Source of the DNA: Ascidiella aspersa
Lineage: Eukaryota
DNA: 64,000 nt
Reading direction: 5' to 3'
Assembly: GCA_963924565.1 (NCBI GenBank)
Contig: OZ004615.1
Location: 7,564,001-7,628,000, forward strand
A model generated the notes under the pieces. It ran no database searches, was not told the DNA's origin, and was given only the letters and a program-made list of their open reading frames with translations. The stretch's first letter is position 1, and each line of letters opens with the position of its first letter. Below, in pieces: positions 2-59,800 of the stretch. Both the position numbers and the translations under genes were made by a program.

Positions 2-3000
2 AAGTGCAATGTTGGCGTCAGCACACCACGTACAACGGAGTACACTGTGACCGGGCTGCGCTCCGAGCAGACCTATGTCTTCCGCGTAGCCGCGCTTAAC
101 GGCGTCGGCCAGGGCAAGCACGAGATGGTCAACGGTAGCGTACAGCCTAAGGAGATCCTCGAAGAGCCGGACATCGTTTTGGATGCCGATATGCGCAAGA
201 ACATCGAGATCAAGGCAGGCGCCACTCTGCGTCTTGTCGCAGATATCACAGGACGACCGAAACCTTCCGTAAAGTGGACAAAACAAGGAGCTACATTGTC
301 GCGACGCGCCGATATCGACGTGACCGATTTGCGTACCACTGTTGTGGTGCCCGATTCAACGCGAGAGGACACCGGCCGATACAACCTGACCGTGTCCAAC
401 CCGAAGGGATCCAAATCGGTCAACGTCAACGTCAAGGTGCTGGACACGCCCGGACCGGTCAGCAACATCGTGGTCAAGGACGTGACCGTCGCGTCGGCTC
501 AGATCTCCTGGACACCACCGGAGCTTGACGGAGGCTCGGAAATTGTCAACTACCTAGTCGAGAAGAAAGAGGCGGACAAGAAGACCTGGTCAATTGCGAC
601 CACCGAGTGCGCAAAGACCGCCTTCCGCGTGACCAAGCTCATCGAGGGCAAGGACTACTATTTCCGCATCAAGGCTGAGAACAAGCTGGGCGTTGGAATT
701 CCAGCCGAAACCTCGAAACCTGTGCGAGCCAGGCACCCGATCACCGAACCTGGACCGGTCAACAAGCTGAAGATCGCCGACGTCACCAAGTCATCGGTCT
801 CCATGACGTGGATCAAGCCGGATCACACCGGTGGCAGCCGCATCATCGGCTACGTCATCGAGTACCAGGGCGAGGGATCCAGCAACTGGGCCGAGTACCG
901 CACTGTCAGCGACACAACGGTCACAGTGCTTAACCTGTCCAACAAAAAGTACCAGTTCCGCGTCAAGGCGCGAAACGAAGAGCTCGAGGGCCCAGCTCGC
1001 GAAACCGACATTGTCGACGTTAAAGAGCCCGCCGAGGCGCCCAAGATCACACTTCCCAAGGAGGTGAAGGCGCGCGCCGGCTCGAAGCTCTTTGTCGAGG
1101 CCAGCGTCACCGGCAAGCCACACCCGATCGCTTACTGGGTGCGCAAGGAGAACGAGTTGCAAGAAAGCGAGCGCGTTCTCATCCAGAAAACTCCGACCGG
1201 CGTAACGCTTACACTTACTAAACCCGAGAGAGCCGATAGCGGGGACTACATGCTTCGAGCCGAGAACCACCACGGCAAGAAGCAAGCCACGGTCAAGCTG
1301 GAGATCCTAGACAGGCCGACGATCCCTCGGGGTCCGGTCGAGTTTAAGGATGTCAACGTCGACACTGTGACTCTCGTTTGGGAGGCTCCGGAAGACGACG
1401 GCGGCTGCGCGATCACAAACTACATCGTGGAGCAGTCCGAGGCCGGTCACCCCGGTTTTAAGACGGTCAGCAGCACTGTTACCAGAACCACGCTACGCGT
1501 TGGCAAGCTGACCAAAGACGCCGAATACATCTTCCGCATCAAGGCAGAGAACAAGTGCGGTGTCAGCGATGTGCTGTCATCAACCTTAATCAAGACACGC
1601 TATCCATTCGACGTCCCTGGGGTGCCGCGAAACCTGCGAGTGGTTAAGATCGGCCGAGAGTCGGCGACGCTCGCATGGGAGGTGCCAGAGTCGGACGGCG
1701 GAAATCCGGTGCGCGGCTACAACGTTGAGAAGAAGGAGGTGAACAGCCTGCTCTGGACGCAGATGAACAAGCACCTGGTCAAGCGCCGCGAGATCGTCGA
1801 CAGCAGCTTGCTGGAAGGCATCGAGTACCAGTTCCGAGTACAGGCTTCCAACACAGCCGGTACGTCACCGTTCAGCGCCCCAACCCAGCCCCTTGTGGCC
1901 AGGGAGCCGTGTGACGCCCCAGGCAAGCCTGAGGTCGTCGACGTTACCAACACGACTGTTGAGCTCGGCTGGGCGGCGCCTAGGAGCGACGGAGGAACCA
2001 AAATCGCTGGCTACATCATCGAGAAGCAGAAGCTTCCCAGCGACAAGTGGACTCGCCATGTCACGACCAGAGGACCTGAGACGCAAACGGTGCTTGAAAA
2101 CCTCGAGGAGGGTGAGCGATATTGCTTCCGCGTGCTCGCCAAGACCGCGGTCGTAACATCGAACCCGTCAGAGGCTACCGAGGCCGTTTTGGTGCGCCAG
2201 GCCATCGTGGCGCCAGGAATCGCGCTTGATGTCAGCTGCAAAGATCTGCTGGAAGTCCGCGCCGGCCAAGACATCGTTGTCGAAGCGACAATCGTCGGAA
2301 AGCCGAAGCCAACAGCTGTGTGGAGCCGCGACGAGCAGCCTATTAAGAGCACAAGCGACGGAGCCATTGTGGCCGAAACGGTTCTTAACAGGTCGCGTCT
2401 GATTATTCGGTCGTGTAAGCGTTCTGATGCCGGCAACTACGTGCTGACGTTGGAGAACTCGAGTGGTACAACATCAGCCACCGCCAAGGTGCGCGTACTC
2501 GATGTACCAGGAGTGCCTCAGGGACCCGCCAAGTTCTCGACCGTGATGGCCGACCGCCTGAAGTTGACTTGGGGTGTGCCGCTCGAAGACGGCGGCGCCG
2601 CTGTCACCAACTACGTGGTCGAACGTCGCGAGACTTCGCGGCCAACTTGGGCCATGGTTAGCGGCAGCGCGCAGGGCACAGAGCTCAAGGTGGGCAAGCT
2701 TATCCAGCAGCACGAGTACGAATTCCGTATCTCGGCCGAGAACAAGTACGGTGTCGGGCAGCCGCTCGTCACCGACGCGGTGGTCGCCAAAAACCCGTAC
2801 ACGGTTCCCGGAGCACCCGAGCCGCCCGCGGTCACCAACCCGACAAAGGACGCGATGACCGTTTCCTGGAAGTCGCCGGCTGAGGACGGCGGCAAGCCAA
2901 TCAGCGGCTACTACCTGGAGAAGCGTGAAACCAAGGCGGTACAATGGTCCAAGGTGAACCGACGACCGGTTTCGGATCGCAGCATTAAAGTAACCGGGCT

Positions 3001-4162
3001 TTGCGAGGGAGTCGAGTACGAGTACCGGGTGGCCGCCGAGAACGTGGCCGGCATCGGTGCACCAAGCGCCCCGTCCGGCCCGGCCACCGCCGAGGACCCC
3101 AAGTACCCCCCGGGCCCGCCCGCGTTCCCCAAGGTAGTTGACATGACTAGGAGCAGCGTGGATTTGATCTGGGGCAAACCGGCTTACGACGGCGATAGTC
3201 CTATCACCGGCTACATCGTTGAGATGTCGAACCCGGAGAGCCCGGACAAGTTCGAGCGCGTTGCCACCACGCATATTCTGAAGCACACTGTTACAGCGCT
3301 GGGCGAAGGACGCGAGTACAAGTTCCGCGTAAAGGCAACCAACGCAGTTGGCGATTCGGAGGCGAGCGAGGTCCAGGGATCCGTGATTCCAAAGGACATT
3401 CTCGAGCCACCCGCCATCGACTTGGATGCCACCCTCACCAAGGCTTTGGTTATCAGGGCTGGAAACACAATCCGCCTTTACTGCACATTGAAAGGCAGGC
3501 CGGCGCCGCGAGTCAGCTGGGCCAAGCTGGACGGAGAGCTGTCGCTTAACAGAGTCGAAATCAAGACATCCGACTGGGACAGCTTGCTGCTCGTGCCCAA
3601 CTGCAACCGAGACGACACAGGCAAGTACATGATCACGCTTGAGAACACGAGCGGCGTCAAGTCAGCCACCGTGTCGGTGCGCGTCCAGGACACGCCAGGC
3701 GCACCAGGGCCCATTACCTTCAAGGAAGTCACCCTGGAAACGGCCGCACTGGCTTGGGAGATGCCCCTGAACGACGGCGGATCGCCAGTGACCAACTACG
3801 TGGTCGAAAAGCGCGAGTCAACGCGTAAGGCTTGGGCAACAGTCACCACCCAATGCTCCAGGACATCTTGGACCGTCAACAAGCTAGAAGCCGGCAAAAG
3901 CTACTTCTTCCGCGTGATGGCTGAGAACGAGTACGGCGTTGGCGTTCCGTACGAGACCCCGGAACCGGTCAAGGCCACTCAGGAGCCCGGCCCCGTCACG
4001 AAACTGGAAGTGGCCGAAACTACCAAGACGTCGGCCACCATTCAGTGGCAGAAGCCGACGCACGACGGAGGCAGCAGGCTTAGCGGCTACGTGGTCGAAA
4101 TCGCGCCCAAGGACACTGACGAATGGGAAACTGTGACCGAAGTGAAGCTGCTCAGTTACAAG
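2..4162 (+). CDS. TTN: Titin large exon (5' end outside window): super-repeat 1 and start of repeat 2
   Basis: Frame is open from base 2 ([16 protein letters not shown]...). Donor AAG|gtaagg at 4162/4163. Confidence 0.93.
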
Positions 4163-7100: not shown

Positions 7101-10100
7101 TCGGTGTAATCATGGCCCAGCATAAACGTTCTAAAAACACATATATGGTTTAGTTATACAGTAAAAAGTGCAATTTATTCGTTTTTCCAAAACTCTTATT
7201 CGTTTTACTTAACCGCAAGCCTTAAATACAGCACCTCGCCACTTTCTTTAGAAACATTGTTTATTAAATTAACGTTATTTTGTAAAAAAAATAACGTTGT
7301 TTCTATTTGCTATTGCAGACAAGCCTGGCCAGGTTACCGGCCCAGTAAAGATTGTGGGCATGACTGCAAGCAAATGCAAGCTGGCCTGGGGCGCGCCTGC
7401 CGAGAATGGCGGAAGCACCATCACAAACTATGTGGTCGAAAAACGCGAGACCAGCCGCTTGCTTTGGACTTCTGTAAGTGTTATGCAAGGGCTGTGTTTG
7501 TGTGCTAACGATGTCTTAACATCTAACTTACAGATCCTTTCATAGCAATGTAGGTAGTTACAGTAGGTTGATTATAATTGAAAAGCGTCAAGGCCGATTA
7601 TAACCAATAAACCTTTGGCATGCTTACCAGTGCCTCTTTAAACGCTAAAAATACCATCTCGGGCGCTAATCTTAAGTCTTATAGCCGCCACTAAAGGACT
7701 GACGCTTATCCGCTAAGCTAGTCAAGTGTCTGGAGTATAAGCAGCAGGCCTGCGCTTAACGCAGATTGCCCCTTTCCGACTCATAAGCTTATGTGTACCA
7801 TTCGAAGGTTGGCGACGCCGGCATGCACTGCGACATCAACTGCGCCAAGCTGGTGGCGGGCAACCAGTACGTGTTCCGCGTCTCCGCTCAGAACAAGTAC
7901 GGAGTCGGGCCACCGCTCGAATCGGCCGCAGCTGTCTGCAAAAATCCATTCGGTAAGTGGAAAGCTGTTTAAAAAATTCGATGTTGAAAGCGAGTTGAAA
8001 TGGTCTACGTATAGCTATAGGATAAATATAAGCATAATGAAATAATTGAAACATATTATACTTTTTGGATTTAATTTTCATCTACAATATTGCTTTTTCT
8101 CTTTAGATGCTCCTGGCAAACCAGGAAAGCCTCAGGTCACCAAGTCGACCAAGACCACTATGACTGTGACTTGGGACCGACCAGAGTCGGACGGGGGCAG
8201 CGAAATCATCGGATACCATCTTGAACGTCATCACAAGAAGGGCCTTAAGTGGATCCGGTAAGTACTCAGCTAATAAATAAAAAAATACACAATAATTGAA
8301 AAATGCAGTGACACTTTTTTGTCAAATGTAATTCCTTATGTTTATCATGTAACCAATTGCAACTAAATGCCCCATATCTGTATTTACTATATTTTCCTCC
8401 CTATGTGTTATTTCAACCTTGTTTTTTGTCACCCAGTTGCAATCAAGAGCCGATCCGCGAAAACCGGCACCGGGTCAACGGACTCACCGAAGACTACGAG
8501 TACGAGTACCGAGTAGCGGCGGTTAACAAGGGCGGAGTCGGCCCGACGAGTGACGAGTCCGACTTCTACACGGCAAGAGACCCGATCTGTAAGTACCCGC
8601 GCTGTTTTCTTTATTCTGCATCGTATTAGTTAAAAGATATCTTTCACTTTGACAGTCGGTTAGTGGCAGACTTTTAAAATTGTATTGGCGCCTGAGCCTT
8701 CAAAAATACGGCACTACGTTAGGTTAAAGGTCGCAAGGTCGAATTTCGTCCGAGCTGTACAGACTGAATCTTCTGATTTAGTGGTACCCGGCGTCCCGAC
8801 AGCTATACTGTCTTTGTAATTATACCAGCAGACGTCACGGCTTTCTAGTTATAATTGAAACTTACGTAAGGCGGCGACGCGCAGTGGCCCTGGCGTTGGA
8901 ACGACTTGTCTTGCTGTCTCAGTTTACAGCTGGGAGGTCCATTATGTGCGAGGCAGGGAGTCCCGCGGGACCCAGATCCTCTGCGAGACGCTTTTAGCAC
9001 TAGCACACACTTATCATCGATCATTAGGAGATCTGACAGCTTTGCTTCTTGTAGTCGACAGTTGCTGTGTTGGTGCGAGTTTGCGCTTCAGTATTAAGCG
9101 CCGAATGGATCAGGTCGCTGAGTTACGAACGAACAGGTTCCAGCATAATGCCGGCAGCCGCAGCGTTAAAGAGTCGCGTACAGTGGCTACTACTTCTACC
9201 AGTTCAAAGACTGTAGTAACTACTAAAGGCGGTAGCAGTTCAAAGTCTGTAGTGACTACTAAAGGTGGGAGCAGTTCAAAGTCTGTAGTGCATACGAGAG
9301 GTGGTAGAACAAGCAGTATTCTGCGGAAATCCGGTAACGAAATCGGCGCCGATGATAATCGCGAGCTCTCGATCAGAGAAAAGAAGCGAAAGAGATGGGA
9401 CAAGGTCGTAAAGGATTCGGAAAGCAAGCTCGAAAACTTGGAAGGCGATGTTCTGGAGCACGCTTTGAGTGGCGACGACCACATCGCCGCTTTCTACAAG
9501 CGCCAGTACTCGCCCGCGCCAGCTCACTCGCGCTTTCTGAGTACGACGGACGAGTCGACGTCGCAAACTCGCTCAACTTCGCTGAGCAGAGTAGAGCGAG
9601 TTCAGGAAACACGTGAGGGCGAAAAGCGCAGCGCTTCTCTGGGAAGGGAAACGAGTAACTCGGCGACTCGTCGCGAAAAAGTGAAATACGCAGAGCCGAG
9701 CGATTTTCGCGACCTTTTTGACTCGATAAGCTCGTTGAGCGCGAGTATAGATCGCGTCGAGTCCGAGTTCAAGCAGAGAAACGATATTTTCGGGTCAGTG
9801 AAAGTGAAGAGAAGGCAAAAGCGTAAGTGAAAAAGTTATCAAGAAAATAATTATTGTTACAAAAGAAATTAGTTTAAATCAAAGTATATTGATTTTCAAA
9901 ACTGTCTTCGCCTATAGAATGCTGCTATTGAGTACTATTGCTATATTCCAGGCTAAAATAAAAATACCCGAATACGAAATTTAAAGTTTCATAACATCTA
10001 TCAGAATTGCCTATAAAACGAGTATACGAGTAGCGACGGTTTTTTTTTTTTATTTCCATAGATGCGCCCGGTGCCCCCGGAACCCCACAGGTCACCGACA

Positions 10101-13100
10101 CCACCAAGACCTCTATCAGTCTGTCCTGGGCCAAGTCGACCTACGACGGCGGCGCTCCCATTACCGGCTACTCGGTCGAAATGGCCAAGGCCGACTCGGA
10201 CGAGTACGAGTTGGTCAGCGGGCCGCGTCCGGTGCTCGGCACCGAGTACGTGGTGACGAGTCTACTCACCGACCTAAAATACAAGTAAGTAAAAAAGCTT
10301 GTTAGTATAAAAGATCTGATTTTATTGCTACAAAAATTATACGAAATTAAGCTTTATAGCAAAATGTCGCTAAACTTAGATTTACGACTGTAAGGGAAAA
10401 ATATTTCGTATTTTTACGCGTACCAACGCAGGCTTGATAGAACGTTTCACATTTCGCCTTTCTATCGTGTCGTTTTCATTTTACGGCGCCTCACTTTTTT
10501 TCAAATTTTTTAACTTAATTTTCTGTCCGTCAAGCTGAAACTCACAATCTTCTCCTCTTCAACTCAGGTTCCGTGTCCGCGCGGTCAACGAGGCCGGAAG
10601 CTCGGAGCCAAGCGAGTCCAGTGAGGCGGTCAGTCCTCTCGAGATTGTTGAGCCTCCAAGCTACGAGCTGGACGCCGACATGAAGCAGAGTCTGACCGTG
10701 AGAGCCGGAGGATCAATCCGCCTCTTCGTCACCATGAAGGGAAGACCGACTCCGGAAGCCAGCTGGACCAAGGAGGGCGGGCTCCCTCAGGATAGGACAG
10801 TTATTGACACAACGTCTTCCTACAGGTTTGTGTTCAGCGTCCTTTACAATTTAATTTATAGTTGTATTAGGATATGCAAAGATCTGCGCGCTGTAAAATT
10901 CCAGCTTTTGCTTGAAAGCGACTTAAACCATCCAAGAGATAAAAATGGGTTAAAAAACTAAATTACAGAGCAAATTATTTTACAGTAAGGTAATGACATA
11001 AATTAGATCAATACCTACAAAGATTCTATTTATGGAAAACCTTGTTCAATAATTAACACGTTGTGCTTATTTGTTGCAGCTTGCTGGTTGTGAGCAACTG
11101 CAACCGACACGACGTCGGCAAGTACGAGCTCATTCTGGAGAACCCGGCCGGATCCAAGATGGTGGCCGTCAACGTCAAGGTGCTAGACTCGCCCGGGCCG
11201 CCGCAAAACCTGGAAGTCAAGGAGGTAAATGCACACACCAATGTTTTGCAAGAAGAAATGTAGTATTTTCCCACATTTTTGTTTAGCGAACATCGCCATA
11301 AAGCGGACGTAAAATACAAAATTTAAATTTGCATGTCAGATATCTTCGCTTTTACATGATACCGTCTTTAACAAACGCTATGTCTTTCAGGTTACGAGGA
11401 ACTCCGCTTTTATTATGTGGGATCCTCCAAAGACCGACGGCGGCGCCGTCGTCTCAAACTACATCGTCGAGCGACGCCTTTCCACCAGAAAGGCCTGGAC
11501 CACTGTGTCAACAGAGGTATTAATGAAACCGCAACACTCAGTAAACAGTCACTTAAGCAATTTCAACGGTATAAATGTATAACAAAATTGGCAAATATGT
11601 ATTGCGATAGAGGCATACTGAATGGCGTTAGATTTAAAACCGTTTTTAAACTCCGATAAATAAAATTTCCCAAAAAAAAATAAAATTACTAAAAATAATT
11701 AAAATTGTCAAAAAAGATAAATATCAAAACCGCCTTATAAACGGCTTAAATCTTCCTCTTGAAAATTCTTTCCTTTGTATCCACCAGGTCCACCGAGAAT
11801 CGCACAAGATCACCGGATTAGCGGAGGGCGAGCAATACTTCTTCCGCGTCCTGGCCGAGAACAAATACGGCATTGGGGAGCCGGCCGAGACCCGTGAAGT
11901 GGCCCGTGCGTCCGAGGCGCCCGGCGCGCCCAAGAGCGTCGACGTCACCGAGTTCAGCCGGACCGCCGTGTCCTTGGCCTGGACCAAGCCCGAGACCGAC
12001 GGGGGTTCCCCGATCCTTGCCTACCTGCTCGAGATGCAGCGCGTTGGCATGGAAACGTGGGTGAACAAGGCCACCACGCAGGCGCTCAAGTAAGTTGATT
12101 TTTATAGAGAAGTAAGTTGATTTTTATAGAGTTCTAATCCTTAGTATTTTGCGACCTAAATTAAAACAGTTAAAAAAAATTTTTTATGGCCTTTATAAAA
12201 AAGTTATTTTTAATCTTTCATCTCAAATAACGAACTTTGACCTTTGCGCAGGGCCACCGTTTCGGACTTGAACGAGGGCGCCGAGTACCATTTCCGCGTG
12301 CGCGCCAAGAACGCGGTCGGCGCCGGCGAGGCCACGCAGACCCTGCACTCGGTTACCGCCAAGGATGACGTCATCAGGCCCGGCGTCGACCTGCGCGAGC
12401 TCTACATGGGAACTGTGACGGCCAAGGCCGGATCGAACCTGAAGATAAAGCTGCCGCTCCTAGGCAAACCGCTACCAACAGCCCAATGGCGTCGTAATGA
12501 AGAGAATGTTCGCGAAACGCAGCGAGTCAACACCGAAACTTGCGACGGCTTTACCACCTTGAATATAAGGGATTGTCAGCGCGGCGACGCCGGGAGCTAC
12601 GAGGTCGTGGTCAAGAACCCGGCCGGCACCAAGACCGCTAACATCAGGGTAAAATAACTGATAAAATCGGTAATAAAAAATGAAGCGTTTCCGATAAAGC
12701 ACGAGAGAACTGTGGAAGGAAATAACTTCAAAATTAACCTTTTCTTATTAAAACACAAATTAAGTTAATCATTGGAGTATAGGTAATATTTTACGTATCG
12801 ATAACTATATATTCATTTTCCACATTTTTTACTTCTGTATGGGCTTTGATATTCTTTTTAAGTTAATCATAATAAAATTAGACAAAATGCAAAATAACTA
12901 AAAGGAAATGCAGAATTTAATCCTTATAAATTCTCACCCCGAAAAGGAAACTTATGGATAAAGAGACTTGGTTCACAAAAACTCACAAAAAAAAATTTCT
13001 AACCTTTAAATGTTCCGCTTTGCAGTTGACGGTCTTCGACTGTCCAAGCGCGCCGCGCGGCCCGATTGAGTTCACCAACGTCACAGCGGATTCGCTGACG

Positions 13101-16100: not shown

Positions 16101-19100
16101 TAAACTCGATGTAATTTAAAGCTCAACAGTAACTTACTTGTTTTGCTTTCGGCTAACTCGCTTTGCTCTTTGGTTGCGCAGAAAGGGAACTCGCTGGGTT
16201 CGCGCTACTCGCAAGAACGTGAGCGAGTGCCGCTTCCGACTCACCGGACTGCCAGAGGGCAACGAAATCGAGTTCCGAGTAGCGGCCGAGAACGCCGCCG
16301 GAACCGGAGAGCCCTCGGAACCGTCAACCTACGCTCACATCGTCGACCCGATTTACCCGCCTGGTATGTCATTATAAAACAGTTTGTGACGTAACAATGT
16401 TGTTTACTTTTAAAATGTAATATTGTTTAAATCTTCAAATGATTACCTTAAAGGTCCGCCAGCCAACTTGAAGACCACCGAGACGACGCGCAAGAGCGCC
16501 ACCCTGGCCTGGACCAAGCCGATGTACGACGGAGGCAGTGACGTCATGGGCTACGTCATCCAGTACGCTGCGGCCAAGGGCGATGACGAGGTGTCGGAAG
16601 ACGCCTGGGTGAAGTGCCCGGTGCCCGTGCGTTACTTGCTCACCGAATACACGGTGTGCGACCTGGTCGAAAACCAACAGTACAAGCTCAGGTATGTTTG
16701 GGTGTGAATTACATTTTTATTATAAATCATTAAAATCCAATTTTGAGACCTTTTTAAACTTCGTAAAAGCTTGCAAAGCTTTGCAATGTCAAGATGTCGC
16801 TTTATGGAGTCAGCTGGTCATTACTAGAAGTAGTAGAAATTTGATTAAAAAAATCGCCTTAAACCGGTCTTCATACTCTAACACTTTACAATTACAGGAT
16901 CGCTGCGGTGAACAAGGCCGGCCCCGGCGAATTCGCCCAGGTACCCGGCCTAGTTGTGGCCAAGGACCTTCTTTTGGTCCCGGACATGGACATCGACGCG
17001 AGCCTGAGGCAGGCGCTCAAGGTCAAAGCGGGCAACTCGATCCGCCTGTTCGCCACCTACCGGGGAAGTCCTGCGCCCGAGATCACGTGGCGCCTGGACG
17101 AAGGGAAACTCCCCGACGCGGCGCACGTCGACACCACTGATTCGACAACTTTGATGCTCATCGAAGATTCGACGAGGTTTGGAGATTTTTGTAATAGATA
17201 AAATACACCTATTTTCTTACAAGCATTTTCCTATCTTATATAAAAACAGCTATTTTCTTAATAAATGATAAGCACGTTTTCCTATCTTATAAAAAACAGA
17301 TATTTTCTTATTAGCACTTTTTCGTATCTTAATCTCAACACCCCGAGCTAATCCACGTCCAATTTATCCCAGGAACCACAGCGGCAAGTACGGTCTCACC
17401 CTGGAGAACAGCGCCGGGTCTAAAACAGCCACGGTCAGTGTCGTGGTGCTGGACAGTCCGTCGGCGCCGGTCAAGCTGGCCGTCAAGGACGTGACCAAGG
17501 AATCGGCGACCCTTACCTGGGAACCGCCGACCAACGACGGCGGCAGCGTGGTGAACCACTACATCGTCGAAAAGAAGGAGACCACTAAAAAGGCCTGGTC
17601 CACTGTCACGATGACATGCGTCCGAAATTCATTTAAGGTATATTTTGCAAAAAAGTTTAAACCATTAGCTCCAGTAGTTTTTAACCTTTTCAGTTTTGTA
17701 AGTCCTGTGAAAAACTTAATAGAATTGAACGAATCCATTTTACATATTAAAAAGTTATAATTAATCACCTAATGAATAAACACTTTAAAAAAATCTCAAT
17801 AATATCCATTCAAAGTAAACCCTAATATTTACAAAGTTTTTTGAGCAGTTCAAAATAGCACGTCCTTTGTCATTGCCAAAGTAACCACCGTCAAAGTAGA
17901 ATTTTAGCTTCAGGCGAAAATTGCCGATAAAATAAGTACCATTGGTTTAAACTATAACAAAAATCGACCAACTCTTTACAGGTTCTCAACCTGAACGAGG
18001 GAATGAGCTACTATTTCCGCGTGATGGCCGAGAACGAGTACGGCATCGGCGCCGCCTGCGAGACCCCGGGGGCCGTGAAGGCGTCTGAGGTTCCGAGCGC
18101 CCCTGGGCGTCTCGAGGTCACACAGACAACGTGCAACAGCGTGTCGTTGGCCTGGGCCAAGGCAGAGACGGACGGTGGCAGTAAAGTGACAGGTATGTGT
18201 CATGATCAGCATTAGCTTGAAAAACAAGTTTCAAGATTGGTTAATGGTTATGCAAATATGAAATATAATTTTTCCCTACATATTTCATAATACCTTGCCT
18301 AAAGGTATAACACACTTGTCACATGTAATTTGCCATCCAATTACAATCATTTTCCCCTATATAACCTCTTGTTATCGCACCAACAAACTAAATGCATCAC
18401 ATCTCCTCTTCCGAAGGTTACCTGATCGAATACCGCGACGCGGCTTCTGAGCAGTGGAAGCAGGCCTCTCAAGTGAAGGGCCTCTCGGGCACCGTGGGTC
18501 GCCTCTCGGAGGGCAAGGACTACTGCTTCAGGGTGAAAGCGCTTAACGAGAACGGATTGGGAGATGCGCGCGAACTGATGCAACCGGTTACAGCCAAGGA
18601 CGAGGTAAAGATGTTAAAAAAGTTTCAACTGAAATAAGTCATAATTGAAATAATTTAAGATGCTTGGTTCCAAATAAAAAGGGGAAAATTATGTTTAAAA
18701 ATCTCAATGTTTTAATTCAGGTTGAGCCAGCCGCTATCGACTTCGGCGGCCTTTCATCGTTGGTCTTCTACGCCAAGAAGGGCAGTGACGTCAAGGCCAA
18801 GGTCGCCCTGGTGGGAAAACCCCTGCCGGTTGCGCAGTGGCGACGCGACGGCGACGAACTGCGTCAGACCAGCCGCGTGAACGTGGAAGCGTTGGAAAAC
18901 TACACGATACTGACCATTAAAAGTACGCACGAAATGCCGAAACTTTAAAATTTTTGTTGGGGATAAATTATGATGTTGAACCATGCGTTCTAGATTTTAG
19001 GAAACTAAAATAAAATAACTCCTACTTAGACTGCATCGTGGAAGACGCCGGCGACTACGAGCTGACCGTGTCCAACCTGATGGGCAAAAAGACGGCCAAG

Positions 19101-22100: not shown

Positions 22101-25100
22101 AAATCCCCACTTTCAGGGTGCGCGCCGAGAACAAGTTCGGGCTGGGTGACGTCACCGAGTCGGCGCCGGTGGTCACCAAGAACCCGTTCAAGGTGCCCGG
22201 GGCGCCCGGCAAGCCGGAGGCCACCAACGTGCACAGCAAGGGCCTGATCCTGACCTGGGCGCGACCGGAAAGCGACGGCGGCTCGGAGATTTGCAACTAC
22301 GTGGTCGAGAAGCGCGAAAAGCTCGGCGCCAAGTGGTTCCGAGTGACGTCACGCCAGATCGAGGAGTGCCGCCTGAAGGTGTCTGGTCTGCAGGAGGGAC
22401 AGGAGTACGAGTTCCAGGTAAAAAAGCCCTGATAGAAACTAGAAATCATTTTCACAATTGTCCGGAAACCCGATCACATCCCTCTTGACAGTTTTTCCAA
22501 CTTTTTCGTAATTTTTTTATGAGTTCCAGATTATGTAATTTGTTTACTTTGAAAGACTTAATACGCAGCTTTTTATCCTTCAATCTGAATTATATTGCCT
22601 GGAATTGTATTGCTTAATAACGCCCTACCACATATCTTGCCTTAGACCGAACTTACCCTGTTATTTCAAATTCAGTTTATTTTCACATTCCGAATGTCAT
22701 TTTTTTTACTTAGTTTTGCTAAAAACAGTATTTTGTCAGCGCATATCCTCACCGCCACTTATTTATTTCAGGTTATGGCCCAGAACGACGAGGGCGTCGG
22801 TCCTGCCGGCCCCTGTTCCGACTCGGTCATGGTCCGCGACCCCGTGTACGCCCCGGGCGAGCCAAGGACGCCAAAGGTTGTCGACACCACAAGGAGTTCG
22901 ATCAGCCTCGCCTGGTCGACGCCAACATACGACGGCGGAAGTTCGGTAAGTTTACAAATCAGCTATATAAAAGGCTTTTAGAGTTTTGGCTAATTGTCCG
23001 TTCAGAGATTGATAAAATTTGTTGTGCTCTCTAAATTTCAAAAGCTTTACACTGCTTCTTGTCCTTAGATCACCGGCTACAGCGTCGAAGTCCTTGCTGA
23101 AGACGCTGACGAGGAAGACTGGGTCGCTTGTACGCCAAGCTGCGGTGTTATTGGCACCCAGTACACGATCAGTGGACTTCAGAATGAGAAGGGATACAAG
23201 ATCAGGATCAAGGCGATCAACGCAGCTGGATCCGGCAACCCGGTCCAACTGCCCAGCGCCGTTCAACCCAAGGACATTCTCATTGCGCCAGAGATCGAAG
23301 TGGACGCCGACGTCGGTCAGTTTGTCACCGTCCGAGCGGGCGGCGTCATTCGCTTGTTCAGCTTGATCCGAGGTCGCCCGACTCCGACAGCCAAGTGGTC
23401 CAAGGAAAAGGGACAACTTAACGACATGGCCCAGATCGAGACCACTAGCATCTCGTCGCTCCTTGTCATCAACAACTGCTCCAGGGAAGACGCGGGACGC
23501 TACACTCTCACGCTCGAGAACTCGTCGGGCACTAAGTGCGTGTCCATCACTGTCAAGGTCCTAGACACGCCCGGGCCCGTCAAGACCCTCAAGGTGACCG
23601 AGGTCACACGCGAGCACGTCATCATCAACTGGGAGGCGCCGGAGCAGGACGGAGGAGCCGTGGTGTCCAACTACGTCATCGAGAAGCGCGAGACCACGCG
23701 AAAGGCCTACCAGGCTGTGGGCAGCACGCCGCACAGGACCAGCTTCAAGGTGACAGGGCTCACAGAAGGCGACACCTACTTCTTTAGGGTTATTGCCGAG
23801 AACGAGCACGGTCTTGGCGTGCCTTGCGAAACAACGCAGGCCACCAAGGTGTCAGAGGCTCCCAGTCTTCCGGAAAAGGTAGATGTTGAGGAGGTGACCG
23901 ACACGACTGTGACCCTCGCCTGGACGAAGCCAGAGCACGACGGCGGCAGTCCTATTACAGGCTACGTTGTCGAGCAAACGCAAAAGGGCGGATTCGAATC
24001 TTGGACGGTGGCCGGGTCTACCAAGAACACACGCTTGACTGTAGGCAAGCTGACCACCGGCAAGGATTACGTGTTCCGCATCCGTGCCCAGAACGAAACC
24101 GGCATCTCGGACGGGCGTGAGACGAGCTCTGTAAATGTTCGTGAAGTGCTCATAGCCCCGAGTGTGGACACTAGTCGACTTTTCAACAACACAGTGTCCG
24201 AAAAGGTGGGCACAAACGTGAAGGTGTCGATCCCGTTCGCCGGCAAGCCAACGCCTATTGCCTACTTCTTGCGCGATGGCGAAGAGCTGAAGCAGACCAG
24301 CCGCGTCAACTCAGAAACGAGCCAAGGCGCAGCCAAGCTTAACATCGGCGAAGTTTCGCGAAAGGACGCCGGCGATTACGACTTGGTCGTCAAGAACTCT
24401 GTTGGCACCAAGCAGATAAAACTGCACGTCACCGTCATGGAGAAGCCGTCGGCGCCGTCAGGGCCTATGGAAATTCGTGACGTCACCGCTGAGAGCGCCA
24501 CAGTGGCCTGGGAAGCCCCTGCCGAAGACGGCGGCACCCCCGTGACCCACTACACGCTCGAGAAGCTGGACAGCTCAGTGGGATGGGTGGAAGTCTCCGG
24601 ATTCGTGGTTCGAACCACGCAGAAGGTGACTCGTCTCGTCACCGGGCAAGAGTACATCTTCCGTGTGCGCGCCGCCAATAAATTCGGCCTCAGCGAGCCC
24701 CTGGACTCAGCGCCGGTGTTGGCACGTCACCCATTCAACAAGCCCGGGGCCCCAGGGGCACCGCAGATCGACCAGGTTTCGAGTGACGCTGTCGTCATCA
24801 GCTGGCAGGAGCCGGCCAACGACGGAGGCTCGCCCATCCTCGGCTACCACATCGAGCGTAAGGACCGCAACTCGATTCTCTGGGCCAAGGCTAACAGCTA
24901 CTCGGTTAAAGACAACTCTTTCCGCTGTGGCAACCTGGCTCCTGGTTTGAGCTACGAGTTCCGCGTCGCAGCCGAGAACCTGGCCGGAATCGGCAAAACG
25001 AGCAAGACTTCGGATTCTGTGATCACGCGCGATCCGATCGAGCCACCGCGCGAAGTGCACGCTTCCAAGGTGAACCGCACACGGATTACAATCAGCTGGC

Positions 25101-28100
25101 GGCGTCCCGAGTACGACGGCGGCAGTCGCATTACCGGCTACGTTGTCGAGAAGCTGGACTTGCCCGACGGGCGCTGGATGAAGTGCAACTTCAACAAGAT
25201 CCTCGACACCTCGTTCGAGGCTGACGGCCTTATCGAAGGCTCGTCCTACGAGTTCCGCGTGATCGCCCAGAACGCGATCGGCAGCGTGAGCAAGCCATCG
25301 ACATCTACTGGTGCCGTGACCGCGCGCGATCTGGTCGAACCGGCCAGCGTCGACGTGGACGCGCAGTTCCGCGACCTGGTCAACGTCAAGGCCGGCGATA
25401 GCGTCACCCTCGTGACCTACGTCAGCGGAAAGCCAGAACCAACGGTCGCCTGGGACAAGGACGGCGTCGATTTCGAGTCGAGTCCAAAGAGGTCGATCAC
25501 AAACACCGACTGCGGATCCAACGTGCTGATCAAGGACTGCAATCGCACCGACAGCGGCGTTTACACCATTAAGGTGCGCAATGCAGGCGGAGAGCGATCC
25601 ATCGGCATCAACGTTAGAGTGCTGGACACCCCAGGCCCTTGCGACAGCGTCAGGGTAAGCGGCGTCACAGCCGAGAAGTGCAACCTCTCCTGGCTAGCTC
25701 CAACTCTCAACGGCGGCGCCAAGGTGTCGACGTACAGCATCGAGAAGCGCGAGACTTCGCGATTGGCCTGGACCGTTGTGACGTCAGCTACTGAGCAGAC
25801 CTCACACAAAGTGACCGGACTGATCCGCGGCAACGAGTACGTCTTCCGCATCCGCGCCGAGAACAAGTTCGGCCCAGGCGAGCCGGTCGAGTCGCCGCCA
25901 GTCAAGGCGGTCGACCCGTACGTGGCGCCTGACGCTCCCAGCAACGTCCAAGTGACGAACGTGATGGGCTCGAGCTGCACCCTCACCTGGGAACGGCCCG
26001 AGTCGGACGGCGGCGCCGAAATCGCCGGCTACATTGTCGAACGCCGCGAGAAGAACTCGTCGCGCTGGCTGCGCGCCAATCGCCGACTCGTGTCCGACTG
26101 TCGCTTGCGAGTCAGCGAGATGAAGGAGGGCTCCGAGCAGGAGTTCCGCGTCTACGCCGAGAACCGCGCCGGCACCGGACAGGCCAGCGACTCTACCGGC
26201 TTCACTCGGATGTCGGACCCGATCTACCCGCCCGAGCAGACCGGAATCCCGCGGGTTGTGGACAGCACAAGGACGTCCGTCACTCTCAAGTGGACTCGTC
26301 CCATGTACGACGGCGGGGCAGACATCGCCGGCTACTCGGTCGAGTACGCTGAGGTATCCGAAACTTCAGACGACAGCGACGAGAGTGAGTTAAGCGAACT
26401 CACTTGGGCGAGGGCAGTCGACGCCTCGCAACTTCGCGTCACAAGCCACACGACCACAGGACTTTCCCCGGACAAGCACTACCGCTTCCGCGTGCGCGCT
26501 CACAACAGCTGCGGTGCCTCGGAGCCTTCCTTGGTACCCGCAAAGGTCACGCCCACAGAGCGACAGGAACCGCCCACTTTCGGGCCGGACGCGGATCTAC
26601 GCCGCACCTTAACAGTAAGGGCTGGAGGATCTGTGCGTCTCGCTGTACCCATTGCCGGGCGCCCGGCCCCTAGCGTCGCCTGGTCGCGTCCAAACAACGG
26701 ACTCAAGGAGCGAGCTATCATCGACACCAGCGACGCAATGACGACTTTGATTCTAGAGAACGTGACCCGGGACGACTCGGCAAAGTACACGCTGACGCTG
26801 GAGAACCAGAGCGGTTCCGTCAACGCTACCGTGCTTGTAAAGGTATTGGACAGCCCAGGGGCCCCTGGCGACCTCGAGGTTACCGGAATGACCAAGAACA
26901 CGGTGTCAGTTACCTGGAAGGCGCCAGAGAACGACGGCGGCAGCACGGTGACCAACTATATCTTGGAGCGCCGTGAAGCGACCAAGAAGTCGTGGTCGAC
27001 TGTGGAAACAGCCTGCAGCCGCACCTCGTACAAATTCAGCAAGCTCAACGAGGGATTCCTATACTACTTCCGCGTAATGGCCGAGAACGAGTACGGCGTT
27101 GGCGCGCCGGCCCAGACCAACAAGCCTCTGAAGGCTTCGGAAGAGCCTGGGCCACCGAGGTCAATCCACTGCACCGACATCACCAAGGACAGTGTCACAT
27201 TGCACTGGAGCAAACCCGATTACGACGGTGGCAGCGAGATTCTGGAGTACAGCATCGACCAGCAACTGAAGGGCTTTGACCAGTGGACCAAACTGAAGAG
27301 CGTAAAGGCCTCCACGCACACGTTCACTGTGAAGTCTCTCAACGAAAATCAACTGCTGACATTCCGCGTTTCGGCTAGGAACGACTCCGGAACCGGACTG
27401 CCGACCGAGCTGCCGGGATACGTCTTGGTTGCCACGCAAACCGCACTTCCCGACGCTGATCTTGGCGGTCTAAGCCAGAAGGTCGTCGAAGGAAAGGCAG
27501 GTAACCTTATCAAGGCTTCCATTCACATCAAAGGAAAGCCGTTCCCGAGCATAACCTGGAAATACGCCGGAGAGGAACTTCCGATGACGAGCCGAATCAA
27601 CTACGATAATGACGGTAGCGTTGCTGTGCTATCGATCAAGGACGCTGAGCTGAAAGACGCAGGCTTGTACGAGCTTGTGCTTGAGAACTGCGTCGGCACC
27701 AAGACCATTCCGGTTTCGGTTCGCGTGTTGGACAAGCCAGCACCGCCCAAGGGCCCAGTCATTTTCTCCAACGTTACTTCCGACTCGCTGGTGATCTCGT
27801 GGAGTCCGCCAGAAGCCGACGGAGGCGCCGCGGTTAATAACTACGTGGTTGACATGCGCGAAACCTCAGGCGACGCAACCGAATGGCGAATGATCTCCGG
27901 GTCAACGGCACGTACCACTCTAAAGGTAACGCGACTTACAACAGGAATGGACTACGCATTCAGGATTCGCGCCGAGAACCGATTTGGCGTTGGCAAGGCT
28001 TTGGAATCGCAAGCGGTCACCGCTCAGTTCCCCTTCAAGACACCAGGTGCTCCGGGCACACCTGAGGTCCTAGCGAACACCCGTGAGACGATGACCATCA

Positions 28101-31100
28101 AGTGGACGGCTCCGGTTAACGACGGAGGCTCCAAGATCCTTGGCTACCACGTCGAGAAGAAGGACAGAAACTCGATCCTCTGGGTCAAGTGCAGCAAGAC
28201 GCTGTTGTCCAACACCGAGTACAAGGTTACAAATCTTCAAGACGGCCTTGAGTACGAGTTCCGCGTCTACGCTGAAAACACGGCCGGCTTTGGTAAGATG
28301 AGCAAAGCCTCGGAACATGCTGTGGCACGCGATTCTGTCGATCCTCCGCGAGATCTCGAGGTGGTCGGAGTCACCCGATCCTCCGTGCATCTTCAGTGGA
28401 AGAAACCAGAGTACGACGGCGGCGCCAAGATCACTGGATACGTAATCGAGCGAGTCGAACTGCCGCAAGGTCGCTGGCTCAAGTGCAATTTCAGCAACGT
28501 GTCGGTGACCAACTTCAACGTGGAAGGCCTGACCGAAGGCAACAAGTACGAGTTCCGGGTGTCGGCCAAGAACGCGGCCGGGGCAATGAGCGCTCCTGCC
28601 ATCATGATGTCGCCCGTGCTTGTCAAGGACGAGATGCAGCCGCCTGTTATTGACATGGACTCGCGCTACTGCGACGTCGTTGTCGTGCGCGCTGGCAAGA
28701 ACATCAAGCTGGAGGCTGGCATCCGAGGCAAGCCGACGCCCACTATGACGTGGAAAAAGGAAACCGATGACGTCAAGGCCTCGCCTCGCGTCACCATCCG
28801 CAACACCGACGTTTCCGCCTGCCTCGAGATCGCCGACGCGACCAGAGAGGACACTGCAACTTACTCGCTGACTGTTCAAAACTTTGCCGGTTCGAGGTCA
28901 CTCTCCATACAGGTCAAGGTTCTTGACAAGCCTGGGCCACCGAGTGGACCAATGAAGGTGACCGGAGTCACTGCTGAGAAGTGTACTCTTCAGTGGGAAT
29001 CGCCAAAGAGGGACGGCGGTGCACCGATCACCAACTACGTGGTCGAGAAGCGCGAAACCAGTCACCTTGCCTGGGTTCTCGTCAACCCTAATGTCGAAGG
29101 AACGACTTGCAAGGTGGGCAAACTGCTCGCCGACAACGAGTACGTTTTCCGAGTGCGCGCCGAGAACAAGTACGGAGTCGGTGAGGCGCTGGAATCGGCT
29201 GAAACCCTCGCCAAGAATCCATTCACAGTTCCCAACGCCCCAGCATCCGTCGAGATCACCTCGGTTACCAGGAGCACGGCAATGCTGACCTGGACGCGTC
29301 CGAGGTCCGATGGAGGGTCCGAGATCTCCGGCTACGCGATCGAGAAGAAGCAGCGCGGAGGACTGCGATGGATTCGCGCCAACAAGCAGAGCGTCATGAA
29401 CTTGCGATTCAAGGCTTGCGAGCTGAACGAGAACCAGGAATACGAGTTCCGCGTCTGCGCCGAAAACGCAGCCGGAGCTGGCGCCTGGAGCGAGGCAACT
29501 CCTTATGTGCTCACGGAGGACCCCAAGTATCCTCCGGAGGCGCCGCTCTCGTTGCGTGTGGACGACACCACCAAGTCCTCGGTCACTCTTTCGTGGATGC
29601 CGCCGACTTTCGACGGCGGAAGCGAAGTGATGGGATACGTGGTCGAAATGAGCAAGCTGAAGAAGCGCCGCACTGTTTCGCAGTCGTCCACCTCCACCAT
29701 CGCGACCACCATCACCACGATGACGATGGATGGCGGAATCGAGGAGCAGTCGCTTCTGGACGAAGAACAAAGAGACATCCGCCGCGAGTGGCTCAAGGTT
29801 TCCGGCAAGAACATCGTCCGCGACACCGAGTACATCGTAACCGGGCTTCGCGACAACGCCGAGTACCTTTTCCGCATAGCCGCGGTCAGCAAGGTCGGAG
29901 CCGGCGATTTCGCAATGCTCCGAATGCCGGTCATTTGCGTGGATCGCCTCGAGATGCCAGAGCTCGTTATCGACGAGACAGTGCGCCGCAACGTCACAAT
30001 CAAAGCCGGCGCCATGTTGCGCCTTAACCTTGGATTCCGCGGCCGGCCAACGCCAACTATTACGTGGTCCAAGGCCGACACTCTGGCCGAAACGCTCAAG
30101 AAGAGAGTGAACGTGGACACGACGCAGTACACAACATCGCTTGTGATCAACGACGCCGATCGCTACGACGCCGGCCGTTACATGGTCACCGTCGAGAACT
30201 GCGAGGGATCAAGGGACTTTGCATACACCGTGAAGGTGCTGGACACGCCCGGGCCAGTGCTCGACCTCGACGTGGCCGAAGTGACGCGCGACTCGGCCTC
30301 TCTTAAGTGGGCGACGCCGGACAACGACGGCAGCGCCGTGATCACCAACTACGTGGTGCAGAAGCGCGAAGCGTCGCGTAAAGCCTGGGCCACAGTGTCC
30401 GCCGACTGCACCAGGAACTCCTGCAAGGTCAGCGGCCTCAACGAAGGCGATTCTTACATGTTCCGCGTGATGGCCGAGAACGCAAACGGCCTCGGCAAGC
30501 CTTGCGAGACCAAAGAGTCGACAAAGATTTCGATGCGTCCGTCCGCGCCCGGAAAGCTCCAGGTGGCTGACGTCACCAAGTCAACGATAACCTTGGCTTG
30601 GAGCAAACCCGAGCAAAACGGCGGCAGCGAGATTACAGGCTACGAGATCGACATGGTCTTGTCGGGATTCGACAACTGGCAAAAGTGTACGGCCGTCAAC
30701 GCGCTCACTGTATTGGTCAAGGGACTGGAAGAAGGACGCCAGTATCTCTTCCGCGTAAAAGCCAAGAATGACAAGGGTCTTAGTGAAGCGTCGGTTTTGG
30801 CAAGTCCGGTAATGATCCAGGACATCGTCGAAGCTCCCGAGCTCAACCTCCGCGATCTTCCTGTGGGCGGCATCCACGGCAAGGCTGGAACGACTATCAG
30901 CTTTGCGATCCCAGTAAGCGGCAAACCGCGGCCTGAGATCAAGTGGACCAAGAACGGCGAGACGCTGAAGCAGACCACTCGTGTTTCGACCGTCAGCACC
31001 CCGATCGATACTTCCATCACGATGAAGACCTGCAAGTTGGAAGACTCGGGAAGATACGAGATCACGGCCACAAACGCGTCCGGCTCAAAGACCGGCGTCG

Positions 31101-58265: not shown

Positions 58266-59800
58266 GGAAACGAACTTTTGAACTGAACTAAACCGGACTT
58301 TTGTCTGACTTATTGTACATAGTGTATTTTTTGTAGCGTTTGTTGTTTTTTGCAGCCGCATGTTCGAAGTCGCCGTTTTAGCCAATCTTATTATTATAAT
58401 TTAAATTAAACATCAAAAATAACTAATTTCGGAGATGGCTAGCCGGTTGAAATGCGCCCTCGGACATTTGGCTATTTGTACAGCGGATTGTATATAGTTA
58501 TGCCGTGAAATATTCGATGCCTTTCGACAGCCATCACCTGAAGTGCCTACTTGCCAAAATCACTGCTATATATCTAAGACAGTCTGAACCGGCATGTCCC
58601 CAATGTATGTTTGACTTCTCTCTTGTTTTACTCGTACCCTTTTTTGCGCGCCCGGCCCGGGAGTATTGTCGAAGTTATGAACTTCGCGTGATTGCTGAAA
58701 GCTTTCATGATGAAAAGCTCAGCCGTGAATTGTGCCCGCCTTCGCCTTTCGAGCGTTCGGTGTGTGGCAGCCTGACTTTTCCGCAGCCTTCTGGCGATTG
58801 AAAATGCGTTCGTGCTGTTAATGCACTTGCGAAAGCCGAGTCGTGCACATCGCTTTGCTTCTGGAGAGAAACGCGGCGAGGTGTACGTTCTTCGGCCAAT
58901 TGTTAATGTGAAATGACTTTTTATCAAGAATTCGCTTTCTCCCTATGTGCCGAAGGTGCCAATATGAGCAATGTTTTTTAAAATCGCTGTTATTTATACA
59001 ATCAATGTTACTAAACGATGAGTATTCATTATCCATTTTTCGTGAATTTAAACTGGTACTCAAACTGTTAAAAGCGTGTTATTATTGTATAACAACAATA
59101 TGCAATCTAGATACTTTTGTATTATTCTTCCATTGAGTCATGAAATGTACTCGCCTTTATTTTATGATAATTGAGTTCTACTTGCCAAGGCACTTTTACC
59201 GTGGTTTATTGAACTATATATCTTGCTTGTGTCCGTCTATCGTGAGATGTCCGCCCGGGTTCGCCCTTGTTACATTGATGTCCGCACGCGTGGTGTGACG
59301 TCACAATGACCCCTCACCAATCCTCGCAATTCGTGACGTCACTGGTGCAAACGACACGTGATAGCATTGCCACGAACCCTTTCTTTGTTTTAGCACCTGG
59401 TAGATGTGTATTCAAGTCACGACAACTGAATTTGTTTTTGTACATACCAAATTTTTTCACCCGCCATTTGCATGAACGAGTTTCACGCTTTACACTGTCG
59501 TAAAGCCTTATCTTCAAATACAATTCGACAAGCACTGCAGTTATCTGGTGTAAATATTTTAAACCTTAGACAGCGTAGTTTGCTATCCTAAAATGAAATG
59601 AAAACAGTTTTTCAGAAAGGCAGTTGATCAATGTGAGGAAATTAACTGTTAGGGTCACGAACAGCCTACAAACAGCAAAGTAGTTGTTCCAAAACTGTTT
59701 AAAATCATGGGCCATTTCTCTTTAGAGCATTGAGCTTTATGTTCTCTTTTCCTACTTGGCAAACAGAAACATGACAACAATAAAAAATAATCCATTTAAA
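58266..59800 (+). other. Probable titin 3'UTR; end uncertain
   Basis: Follows the stop codon. ATTAAA at 58405-58410, and the first AATAAA I noticed is at 59779-59784. Confidence 0.4.

What the first reader, a model, noticed from the sequence alone, without database searches (positions are those of the whole stretch)
8859..9830. Hidden non-modular coding exon inside a titin A-band intron: candidate internal-start, cassette or terminal isoform
Seen: intron 8589-10061 is 1,473 nt, while the other introns are about 80-450 nt and AT-rich. It holds a stop-free frame of about 970 nt with exon-like composition that encodes no Ig or Fn3 domain ([12 protein letters not shown]...KKRKRW...[23 protein letters not shown]...KVKRRQK). 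It ends in a consensus donor C|GTAAGT (9822/9823) in phase 1, which is what the next titin acceptor at 10061 needs. Two in-frame phase-1 acceptors precede it, ending at 8922 and at 9054; the second has a CTGAC branch-like motif and a pyrimidine tract. Inference, three models. (a) Alternative first exon from ATG 9105, giving 239 new residues fused to repeat 2 domain 11 through M10, 12,659 aa by my exon sum, with no Z-disc or I-band. (b) A 768- or 900-nt cassette inserting a disordered segment into the regular C-zone. (c) A terminal exon read to TGA 9830 with AATAAA at 9957. Established: vertebrate titin has an internal-promoter isoform (Cronos) and a terminal novex-3 exon, but both lie well upstream of this position, so this exon is neither.
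Basis: partly seen in the sequence, partly recalled or inferred. Interest (0 to 1): 0.88.

Follow-up and report, generated by a model that had tools for sequence, protein, structure and literature searches.

The report
Orphan coding exon inside titin intron
The longest intron in the thick-filament part of a sea-squirt titin gene holds a real, single-copy open reading frame with no known relatives and with splice signals that fit the titin frame, but no RNA data could be obtained, so how it is used is not known.

Summary
Intron 8589-10061 is 1,473 nt; the 63 other introns in my exon model are 78-447 nt. It contains a 323-codon open frame (8859-9827, ATG 9105, TGA 9828-9830). No dinucleotide shuffle out of 2,000 reached that length, and the other two frames carry 14-21 stops. 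The frame ends on AGC|GTAAGT (9822/9823) in phase 1, which matches the Fn3 exon at 10062. In-phase acceptors end at 8922 and 9054.

The block is single-copy in the 308-Mb genome. It has no Pfam, PDB, Rfam or transposon match, and no relative among 1.84 billion representative proteins. GC3 is 0.55, close to ordinary genes here (median 0.48) and well below titin exons (median 0.78). A single-sequence fold gives two confident long helices in an otherwise disordered, basic, Ser-rich chain.

My best reading (about 0.5) is a lineage-restricted alternative exon joined to titin through the 9822 donor. Within that, I lean towards an internal 5' exon giving a titin of about 12,660 aa that runs from the C-zone to the M-band. 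A cassette exon, a terminal exon or nested gene, and a relic all remain open.

Expression and conservation are therefore untested.

The parts
8437..8588 (+). Upstream titin exon (C-terminal half of an Fn3 domain). Donor TCT|GTAAGT at 8588/8589, phase 1.
   Evidence: Exon model; Pfam fn3 E=2.8e-6.
8589..9054 (+). Upstream part of the long intron. It is unusually GC-rich (0.46-0.47, against a maximum of 0.43 in 63 other introns) and shows no codon periodicity. It could be an upstream intron, or a promoter/outron/5'UTR. It holds a CRE-like GACGTCAC at 8831-8838 followed by TATAAT at 8850-8855.
   Evidence: (z=0.8 for 8859-9104). The motif pair is weak evidence: 2 found against 0.37 expected.
8921..8922 (+). 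Candidate acceptor AG (exon would start at 8923). In phase with the open frame and with the phase-1 donor at 8588. Gives a 900-nt cassette.
   Evidence: PWM 8.2 bits: 13th percentile of real acceptors and top 2.2% of all AG. Chosen by the exon-finding run.
9033..9054 (+). Branch-like CTGAC (9033-9037), pyrimidine tract (9040-9052) and acceptor AG (9053-9054). The exon would start at 9055, in phase, giving a 768-nt cassette. It could also serve as a spliced-leader acceptor 50 nt before the ATG, with no other ATG in between.
   Evidence: Sequence. PWM 4.5 bits: 3rd percentile of real acceptors and top 5% of all AG.
9105..9827 (+). Open frame from its only ATG: 241 codons to TGA 9828-9830, or 239 full codons plus one base if spliced at 9822. 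The product is basic (net +16) and 17% Ser. It has no known domain and no known relative.
9198..9305 (+). In-frame 36-nt tandem repeat, three units, each encoding a 12-residue Ser/Thr/Lys/Gly-rich unit. Differences between units split 5 synonymous to 5 non-synonymous.
   Evidence: pN/pS 0.35, P=0.09.
9348..9509 (+). Predicted long helix, residues 82-135 (pLDDT up to 96). It includes the basic KKRKR cluster at 9381-9395, which resembles a nuclear localisation signal.
   Evidence: single-sequence AlphaFold2. The NLS resemblance is inference only.
9696..9794 (+). Predicted second helix, residues 198-230 (pLDDT 94-96).
9822..9830 (+). Donor AGC|GTAAGT (exon end 9822, phase 1), overlapped by the in-frame stop TGA 9828-9830.
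   Evidence: GTAAGT occurs 20 times on the sense strand of the gene: 17 at model donors, this one, and 2 others. It occurs 0 times in 24.9 kb of giant exons.
9823..10061 (+). AT-rich stretch (GC 0.28) of 239 nt that looks like a normal intron of this gene. AATAAA at 9957-9962. Ends in the strong acceptor at 10061 (14.9 bits).
   Evidence: AATAAA occurs about once per 529 nt in other introns, so it is not evidence in itself.
10062..10284 (+). Next titin exon (N-terminal part of an Fn3 domain), entered in phase 1.
   Evidence: Exon model; Pfam fn3 E=1.1e-9.

Best explanation
The block about 8640-9830 is a real, lineage-restricted protein-coding exon sitting in the intron between two Fn3 domains of C-zone titin. 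Its product is joined to titin through the phase-1 donor at 9822/9823, which splices to the Fn3 exon at 10062.

Most likely it is an alternative 5' exon. In that case transcription starts in the GC-rich stretch 8640-9054, or a spliced leader is added at the acceptor ending at 9054. Translation starts at ATG 9105. A 239-residue head (basic, Ser-rich, mostly disordered, with two long helices) is then fused to the rest of titin. The result would be about 12,660 aa running from the C-zone to the M-band, without Z-disc, I-band or D-zone.

Shown here: the frame, its uniqueness in the genome, the splice-signal geometry and phases, and the composition breaks. Inferred: that it is transcribed, that the donor is used, and where the transcript starts.
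For: The frame is far beyond chance. Synonymous codon choice leans towards host-preferred codons compared with the composition null (z=+3.7).

The open frame closes within the donor consensus itself, and GC drops from 0.52 to 0.28 exactly there. Apart from this one, 17 of the 19 GTAAGT sites on the gene's sense strand are donors. There are none in 24.9 kb of giant exons, against 14 on the antisense strand. The donor phase matches the next exon. If the exon is used, the flanking introns become 334 or 466 nt and 239 nt, which are close to normal sizes.

For an internal start specifically: the segment 8589-8922 has higher GC than any of the 63 other introns. The pre-ATG part of the frame shows no codon preference or periodicity. 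ATG 9105 is the first ATG after the 9054 acceptor. Codon usage fits a lower-expression regime than bulk titin. A CRE-like motif plus TATAAT lies at 8831-8855 (weak).

Against: No relative was found in any database, so there is no evidence of conservation.

The donor PWM score is only 4.6 bits (3rd percentile of real donors) because of the exon-side AGC. The acceptors are also weak. ATG 9105 has C at position -3.

GC3 of 0.55 is far from that of titin exons, including the non-modular M-band exons (0.71-0.83). That fits an independent gene equally well. The promoter motifs are close to chance level. The frame-+2 control in the codon test also gave z=2.8, so the codon signal is modest.
Confidence: 0.5

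Rival explanations
1. Cassette exon. The 8588 donor splices to 9055 (768 nt) or 8923 (900 nt), and 9822 splices to 10062. This inserts 256 or 300 disordered basic residues between two Fn3 domains of the C-zone in a minority of full-length titin transcripts. This reading shares the donor with the best explanation; about 0.2 of that explanation's 0.5 confidence belongs to it.
For: Both acceptors and the donor are phase 1, and both lengths are multiples of 3. The exon-finding run includes 8923-9822 with a gain of about 99 bits over the masked run. The weak sites fit an alternatively included exon. The frame stays open 82 codons upstream of the ATG.
Against: The upstream 'intron' 8589-8922 has higher GC than any real intron. 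There is no codon preference upstream of 9105. All three frames are open for at least 70 codons around 8780-9100, so openness there carries little weight. A 256-300-residue insert would break the regular C-zone domain pattern (established titin knowledge; inference).
Confidence: 0.2
2. The frame is read to TGA 9830 and the transcript ends after AATAAA 9957. Either this is an independent nested gene, with its own promoter or a spliced leader added at 9055, encoding a 241-residue basic helix-bearing protein. Or it is a terminal exon that truncates titin in the C-zone.
For: There is a complete ATG-to-stop frame with AATAAA 127 nt downstream. Codon usage matches ordinary genes of this genome: GC3 0.55, against 0.36-0.67 and median 0.48 in 16 kinase-domain exons. 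The upstream segment is GC-rich. A KKRKR cluster and two long helices suit a small soluble protein (inference).
Against: A consensus GTAAGT overlapping the stop and in the right phase is unlikely by coincidence: roughly 0.3-3% from the decoy rates. Any transcript that runs on to 10062 should be spliced there. AATAAA is expected by chance in about a third of stretches of this length. No such protein exists in the protein collections.
Confidence: 0.28
3. A non-functional or decaying frame. It would be a recently acquired or recently abandoned piece of coding DNA whose frame has not yet been broken, and it is normally spliced out with the intron.
For: No relatives were found. Splice-site scores are weak. 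Codon bias is low, and the constraint signal among repeat units is not significant (P=0.09).
Against: A 323-codon frame with 16-21 stops in the other frames. Codon preference above the composition null. A consensus donor retained on a strand where GTAAGT outside donors is depleted. No parent copy elsewhere in the genome.
Confidence: 0.17
4. Transposon, retrocopy or viral insertion.
For: The block has a composition unlike the surrounding intron, and an A-rich stretch follows the stop.
Against: It is single-copy by DNA and by protein search of the whole genome. There is no Pfam domain. No convincing target-site duplication or terminal repeats were found. There is no clean poly(A) tail.
Confidence: 0.03

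Closest known systems
Cronos, the internal-promoter C-terminal titin isoform of vertebrates (Zou et al. 2015, PMC4720518)
   Same: [quoted passage not shown]
   Different: Cronos starts at the distal I-band. Its initiator Met lies only 12 residues upstream of the exon, as an exon extension, and it is conserved from fish to man. Here the start would lie inside the C-zone, with a separate 239-residue non-modular head exon and no detectable conservation. No transcript has been shown.
Novex-3, the alternative terminal exon of vertebrate titin (my own knowledge; mentioned in PMC4720518)
   Same: A large non-modular exon with its own stop, which could end the protein early.
   Different: Novex-3 lies in the I-band and gives a Z-disc-to-I-band protein of about 700 kDa. 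There is no sequence similarity to this frame. Here a consensus donor overlaps the stop.
Non-modular unique sequences of titin (the M-band insertions in this same gene, for example exons 52575-53045 and 54158-54481)
   Same: Ser/Arg/Lys/Glu-rich coding sequence without domains, flanked by phase-compatible introns.
   Different: Those exons share titin's strong codon bias (GC3 0.71-0.83, titin-like z of -0.8 to -2.3). The candidate does not (GC3 0.55, z=-8.2).
Same-strand nested or operon-type genes resolved by spliced-leader trans-splicing in tunicates
   Same: An unpaired-looking acceptor a short distance before an ATG, inside a larger transcription unit.
   Different: The candidate lies inside an intron downstream of a cis donor, which would compete for the acceptor. 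It also ends in a donor rather than only in a poly(A) signal. No spliced-leader reads were examined.

Membership tests
Cronos-type internal-start titin isoform | Transcription start (or 5' end) inside a titin intron | not testable with these tools
There are only weak motif hints at 8831-8855.
Cronos-type internal-start titin isoform | In-frame ATG continuous with downstream titin exons | tested here: met
   ATG 9105 is open to the donor at 9822 in phase 1, and the next exon at 10062 is entered in phase 1. The sum is 12,660 aa.
Cronos-type internal-start titin isoform | [quoted passage not shown] | tested here: not met
   The site lies between two Fn3 domains, about 12,400 residues before the C-terminus and therefore inside the C-zone. 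No homologue was found.
Novex-3-type terminal exon | Acceptor, own stop codon and poly(A) signal | tested here: inconclusive
   Acceptors at 8922 and 9054, TGA 9830 and AATAAA 9957 are all present. However, AATAAA is at chance level and a consensus donor overlaps the stop.
Novex-3-type terminal exon | Sequence similarity to novex-3 or I-band position | tested here: not met
   No hit in 1.84 billion representatives or in the PDB. The position is in the C-zone.
Cassette exon of titin | Symmetric phases and a length divisible by 3 | tested here: met
   Phase 1-1; 768 or 900 nt.
Cassette exon of titin | Inclusion junctions in RNA | not testable with these tools
Transposon / retrocopy | Multiple copies or a parent gene in the genome; mobile-element domains; target-site duplication | tested here: not met
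   One place by DNA. By protein there were only low-complexity matches at E>0.2. No Pfam hit. No flanking repeat beyond chance.
Ig/Fn3 modular titin exon | Encodes an Ig (I-set) or Fn3 domain | tested here: not met
   No Pfam family at E<=1 for 9105-9827 or 8859-9827. The flanking exons do match fn3 and I-set.

The most novel reading that the evidence does not exclude
A tunicate has independently evolved a Cronos-like, N-terminally truncated titin that begins inside the C-zone. It would carry an orphan 239-residue head (basic, helix-bearing, otherwise disordered) encoded by its own intronic exon. The 5' end might be made by spliced-leader addition at an intronic acceptor (9054) of the titin pre-mRNA itself, rather than by a separate promoter.
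Probability: 0.27. Interest if true: 0.8.

Novelty: new variant of a known kind. Interest (0 to 1): 0.55.

Why it matters
A-band titin is regarded as the invariant, purely modular 'ruler' part of the molecule. No non-modular coding exon, internal start or early end has been described inside the C-zone.

If this exon is expressed, it would show that the ruler region can carry lineage-specific isoform diversity in the sister group of vertebrates. Depending on the model, that could be a truncated titin covering only part of the thick filament, a looped-out insert, or a gene nested in the titin pre-mRNA. It would also be a clean example of a new exon arising in a phase-1 intron of a modular gene.

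If it is not expressed, it is a curiosity: a long intact orphan frame awaiting decay.

Tried and rejected
Expression, junctions, and 5' and 3' ends are all untested.

Homology searches were all blank:
- Pfam
- the word-indexed protein collection (it covers only 133-422 aa candidates)
- full HMMER against 1.84 billion representatives
- ESM Atlas
- PDB sequences (one chance hit at E=0.98)
- JGI metagenome contigs
- Rfam for a hosted RNA

No tunicate genome other than the window's own can be reached with these tools, so the orthologous-intron test was not possible.

Transposon or retrocopy: rejected.

AATAAA 9957 as support for a terminal exon: rejected as uninformative, since it occurs about once per 529 nt in other introns.

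Openness of the frame upstream of the ATG as support for a longer exon: given little weight, because all three frames are open for at least 70 codons there.

Technical failures of mine:
- Searches used wrong coordinates or frames.
- crashed.
- One search used too low an intron penalty and filled introns with micro-exons.
- Only the model is used.

That model's codon term was trained on titin against AT-rich introns. Its choice of 8923-9822 as an exon mostly reflects GC content and is not independent evidence.

Full report
WHAT IS THERE. The window is G000:C9:7564001-7628000 of a 308.6-Mb, 75-contig genome. I built my own exon model for the window. Its codon term was trained on the two giant exons, and its splice-site matrices were trained on the window's introns with this locus left out. 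The model gives 65 titin exons, among them exons of 17,614 nt and 7,494 nt. It gives 63 introns of 78-447 nt (median 191) with GC 0.23-0.43. The intron between the Fn3 exon ending at 8588 and the Fn3 exon starting at 10062 (Pfam fn3) is 1,473 nt, more than three times the next longest.

THE FRAME. Inside that intron, the frame 8859-9827 is open for 323 codons and closes at TGA 9828-9830. Its only ATG is at 9105. None of 2,000 dinucleotide-preserving shuffles of the intron gave an open stretch this long in any of six frames (mean 99, maximum 262). The compositional probability is about 1e-7, and the other two sense frames carry 16 and 21 stops.

WHAT IT IS NOT. It is not a repeat. A DNA search of the whole genome finds only this place. 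A six-frame protein search finds only low-complexity Ser/Thr-rich matches at E>0.2 on another chromosome. There are no flanking duplications or terminal repeats beyond chance. It encodes no Ig, Fn3 or any other Pfam domain. It hosts no Rfam RNA. It has no relative in the word-indexed protein collection, in a full HMMER pass over 1.84 billion representative proteins, in PDB sequences, in the ESM Atlas or in JGI metagenome contigs. On present data it is an orphan.

CODING SIGNAL. Titin exons in this window have GC3 with a median of 0.78. That includes the non-modular M-band exons, at 0.71-0.83. The candidate has GC3 of 0.55 (0.50 in the first half, 0.62 in the second).

In a synonymous-codon test, its codon choice is shifted towards the host-preferred codons compared with its own base composition (z=+3.7). 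It is very far from titin-like (z=-8.2). Real titin exons, modular or not, sit at -0.6 to -2.3. One wrong-frame control also gave z=2.8, so this signal is modest. The segment 8859-9104, upstream of the ATG, shows no preference (z=0.8) and no third-position periodicity.

Sixteen intron-free kinase-domain exons taken from across the genome have GC3 of 0.36-0.67, median 0.48. The candidate is therefore coded like an ordinary gene of this genome, not like the highly biased titin message.

The three in-frame 36-nt repeat units differ by 5 synonymous and 5 non-synonymous changes (pN/pS 0.35, P=0.09). This is suggestive of constraint but not significant.

A single-sequence AlphaFold2 model gives two confident long helices, residues 82-135 and 198-230, with pLDDT up to 96. 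The rest is disordered. The chain is basic (net +16), 17% Ser, and carries a KKRKR cluster.

SPLICE GEOMETRY. The frame closes inside the donor consensus itself (AGC|GTAAGTGA), and GC falls from 0.52 to 0.28 at exactly that point. The 239 nt that follow look like a normal intron of this gene and end in one of its strongest acceptors (14.9 bits).

On my matrix the donor scores only 4.6 bits (3rd percentile of real donors, top 6% of all GT) because of the exon-side AGC. The intron-side hexamer, however, is the consensus. GTAAGT occurs 20 times on the sense strand across the gene. Of these, 17 are model donors, one is this site and 2 are other intronic sites. It never occurs in 24.9 kb of giant exons, and it occurs 14 times on the antisense strand. 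Non-donor GTAAGT is thus depleted on the transcribed strand. A copy sitting in the correct phase within three codons of the end of a 323-codon frame is unlikely to be coincidence; I estimate roughly 0.3-3% from those decoy rates. By comparison, 28% of real exons in the model run out of open frame within two codons of their donor.

The in-phase acceptors score 8.2 bits (ending 8922) and 4.5 bits (ending 9054). These are the 13th and 3rd percentiles of real acceptors. Using the exon would turn one aberrant 1,473-nt intron into introns of 334 or 466 nt and 239 nt, close to the gene's normal range.

WHICH MODEL. Because the block lies in the titin pre-mRNA, a consensus 5' splice site followed by a typical intron and a strong acceptor should be recognised whenever it is part of a transcript. 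That is why I give about 0.5 to the reading that the exon is joined to titin at 9822>10062.

Within that reading I lean towards a 5' exon (about 0.3) over a cassette (about 0.2), for these reasons:
- The stretch 8589-8922 has GC 0.46, above every one of the 63 other introns. The cassette model does not explain this.
- The codon signal is absent upstream of 9105.
- ATG 9105 is the first ATG after the 9054 acceptor.
- A CRE-like GACGTCAC lies at 8831 and is followed by TATAAT at 8850. The octamer is otherwise almost wholly exonic in this window, where it encodes Asp-Val-Thr. The motif pair occurs twice against 0.37 expected, so this is weak.

If so, the 9054 acceptor could be a trans-splice site.

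The main rival (0.28) reads the frame to TGA 9830 as a nested gene or a terminal exon. The ordinary-gene codon usage and the complete ATG-to-stop frame fit this rival. The donor coincidence argues against it, and AATAAA 9957 carries no weight because it occurs about once per 529 nt in other introns. A decaying relic (0.17) cannot be excluded without RNA or related genomes.

WHAT COULD NOT BE DONE. No other tunicate genome is reachable here, so the orthologous intron could not be compared.

COMPARISON WITH KNOWN ISOFORMS. Cronos (PMC4720518) is an intronic start at the distal I-band. Its Met lies 12 residues upstream of the exon, and it is conserved across vertebrates. Novex-3 is an I-band terminal exon. 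The present exon shares the logic of one or the other but fails the position and homology tests for both. It is best classed as a possible new variant of titin isoform diversity, in a region (the C-zone) where none is known.

VERDICT.

Noticed in passing
window 59295-59342: Two full palindromic CRE-type decamers (GTGACGTCAC) lie 38 nt apart, about 1 kb downstream of the titin stop codon (58263-58265). They could belong to the promoter of the next gene or to a 3' control element.
   Followed up: no
window, whole: GACGTCAC occurs 32 times against 2.4 expected. By comparison with my exon coordinates, nearly all copies lie inside titin exons, where the octamer encodes Asp-Val-Thr. The copy at 8831 appears to be the only one inside an intron of the gene.
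   Followed up: partly
window 23069-40682, 42269-49762 and 2-4162: There are giant exons of 17,614 nt, 7,494 nt and at least 4,161 nt. The first is close in size to the 17,106-bp giant exon of human titin quoted in PMC12198301. The stretch between 4242 and 22945 is instead cut into 44 small exons, not counting the candidate exon 8923-9822.
   Followed up: partly
window 1-58300, both strands: GTAAGT outside donors is depleted on the sense strand of the gene: 2 non-donor copies (3 if this site is counted), against 14 copies on the antisense strand. This suggests selection against cryptic donors in the very long titin pre-mRNA.
   Followed up: partly
window 16185/16186: The model acceptor for exon 16186-16363 scores -2.8 bits, by far the worst in the gene. 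The true acceptor may be the CAG ending at 16181, which an earlier run chose. The exon boundary here is uncertain.
   Followed up: no
G000:C5:29129050-29131069 (loci L003-L009): A run of open frames on chromosome piece C5 gives weak matches (E 0.26-3.7) to the candidate's Ser/Thr/Lys repeat region. It looks like a Ser/Thr-rich tandem-repeat (mucin-like) coding region and is probably unrelated.
   Followed up: no
G000:C3:32.6-37.9 Mb and C2:2.4-3.1 Mb: There are large clusters of partial protein-kinase-domain matches (profile positions about 44-257). Many carry one in-frame TAA. These suggest expanded tandem kinase or pseudokinase gene families, or introns at a fixed position.
   Followed up: no
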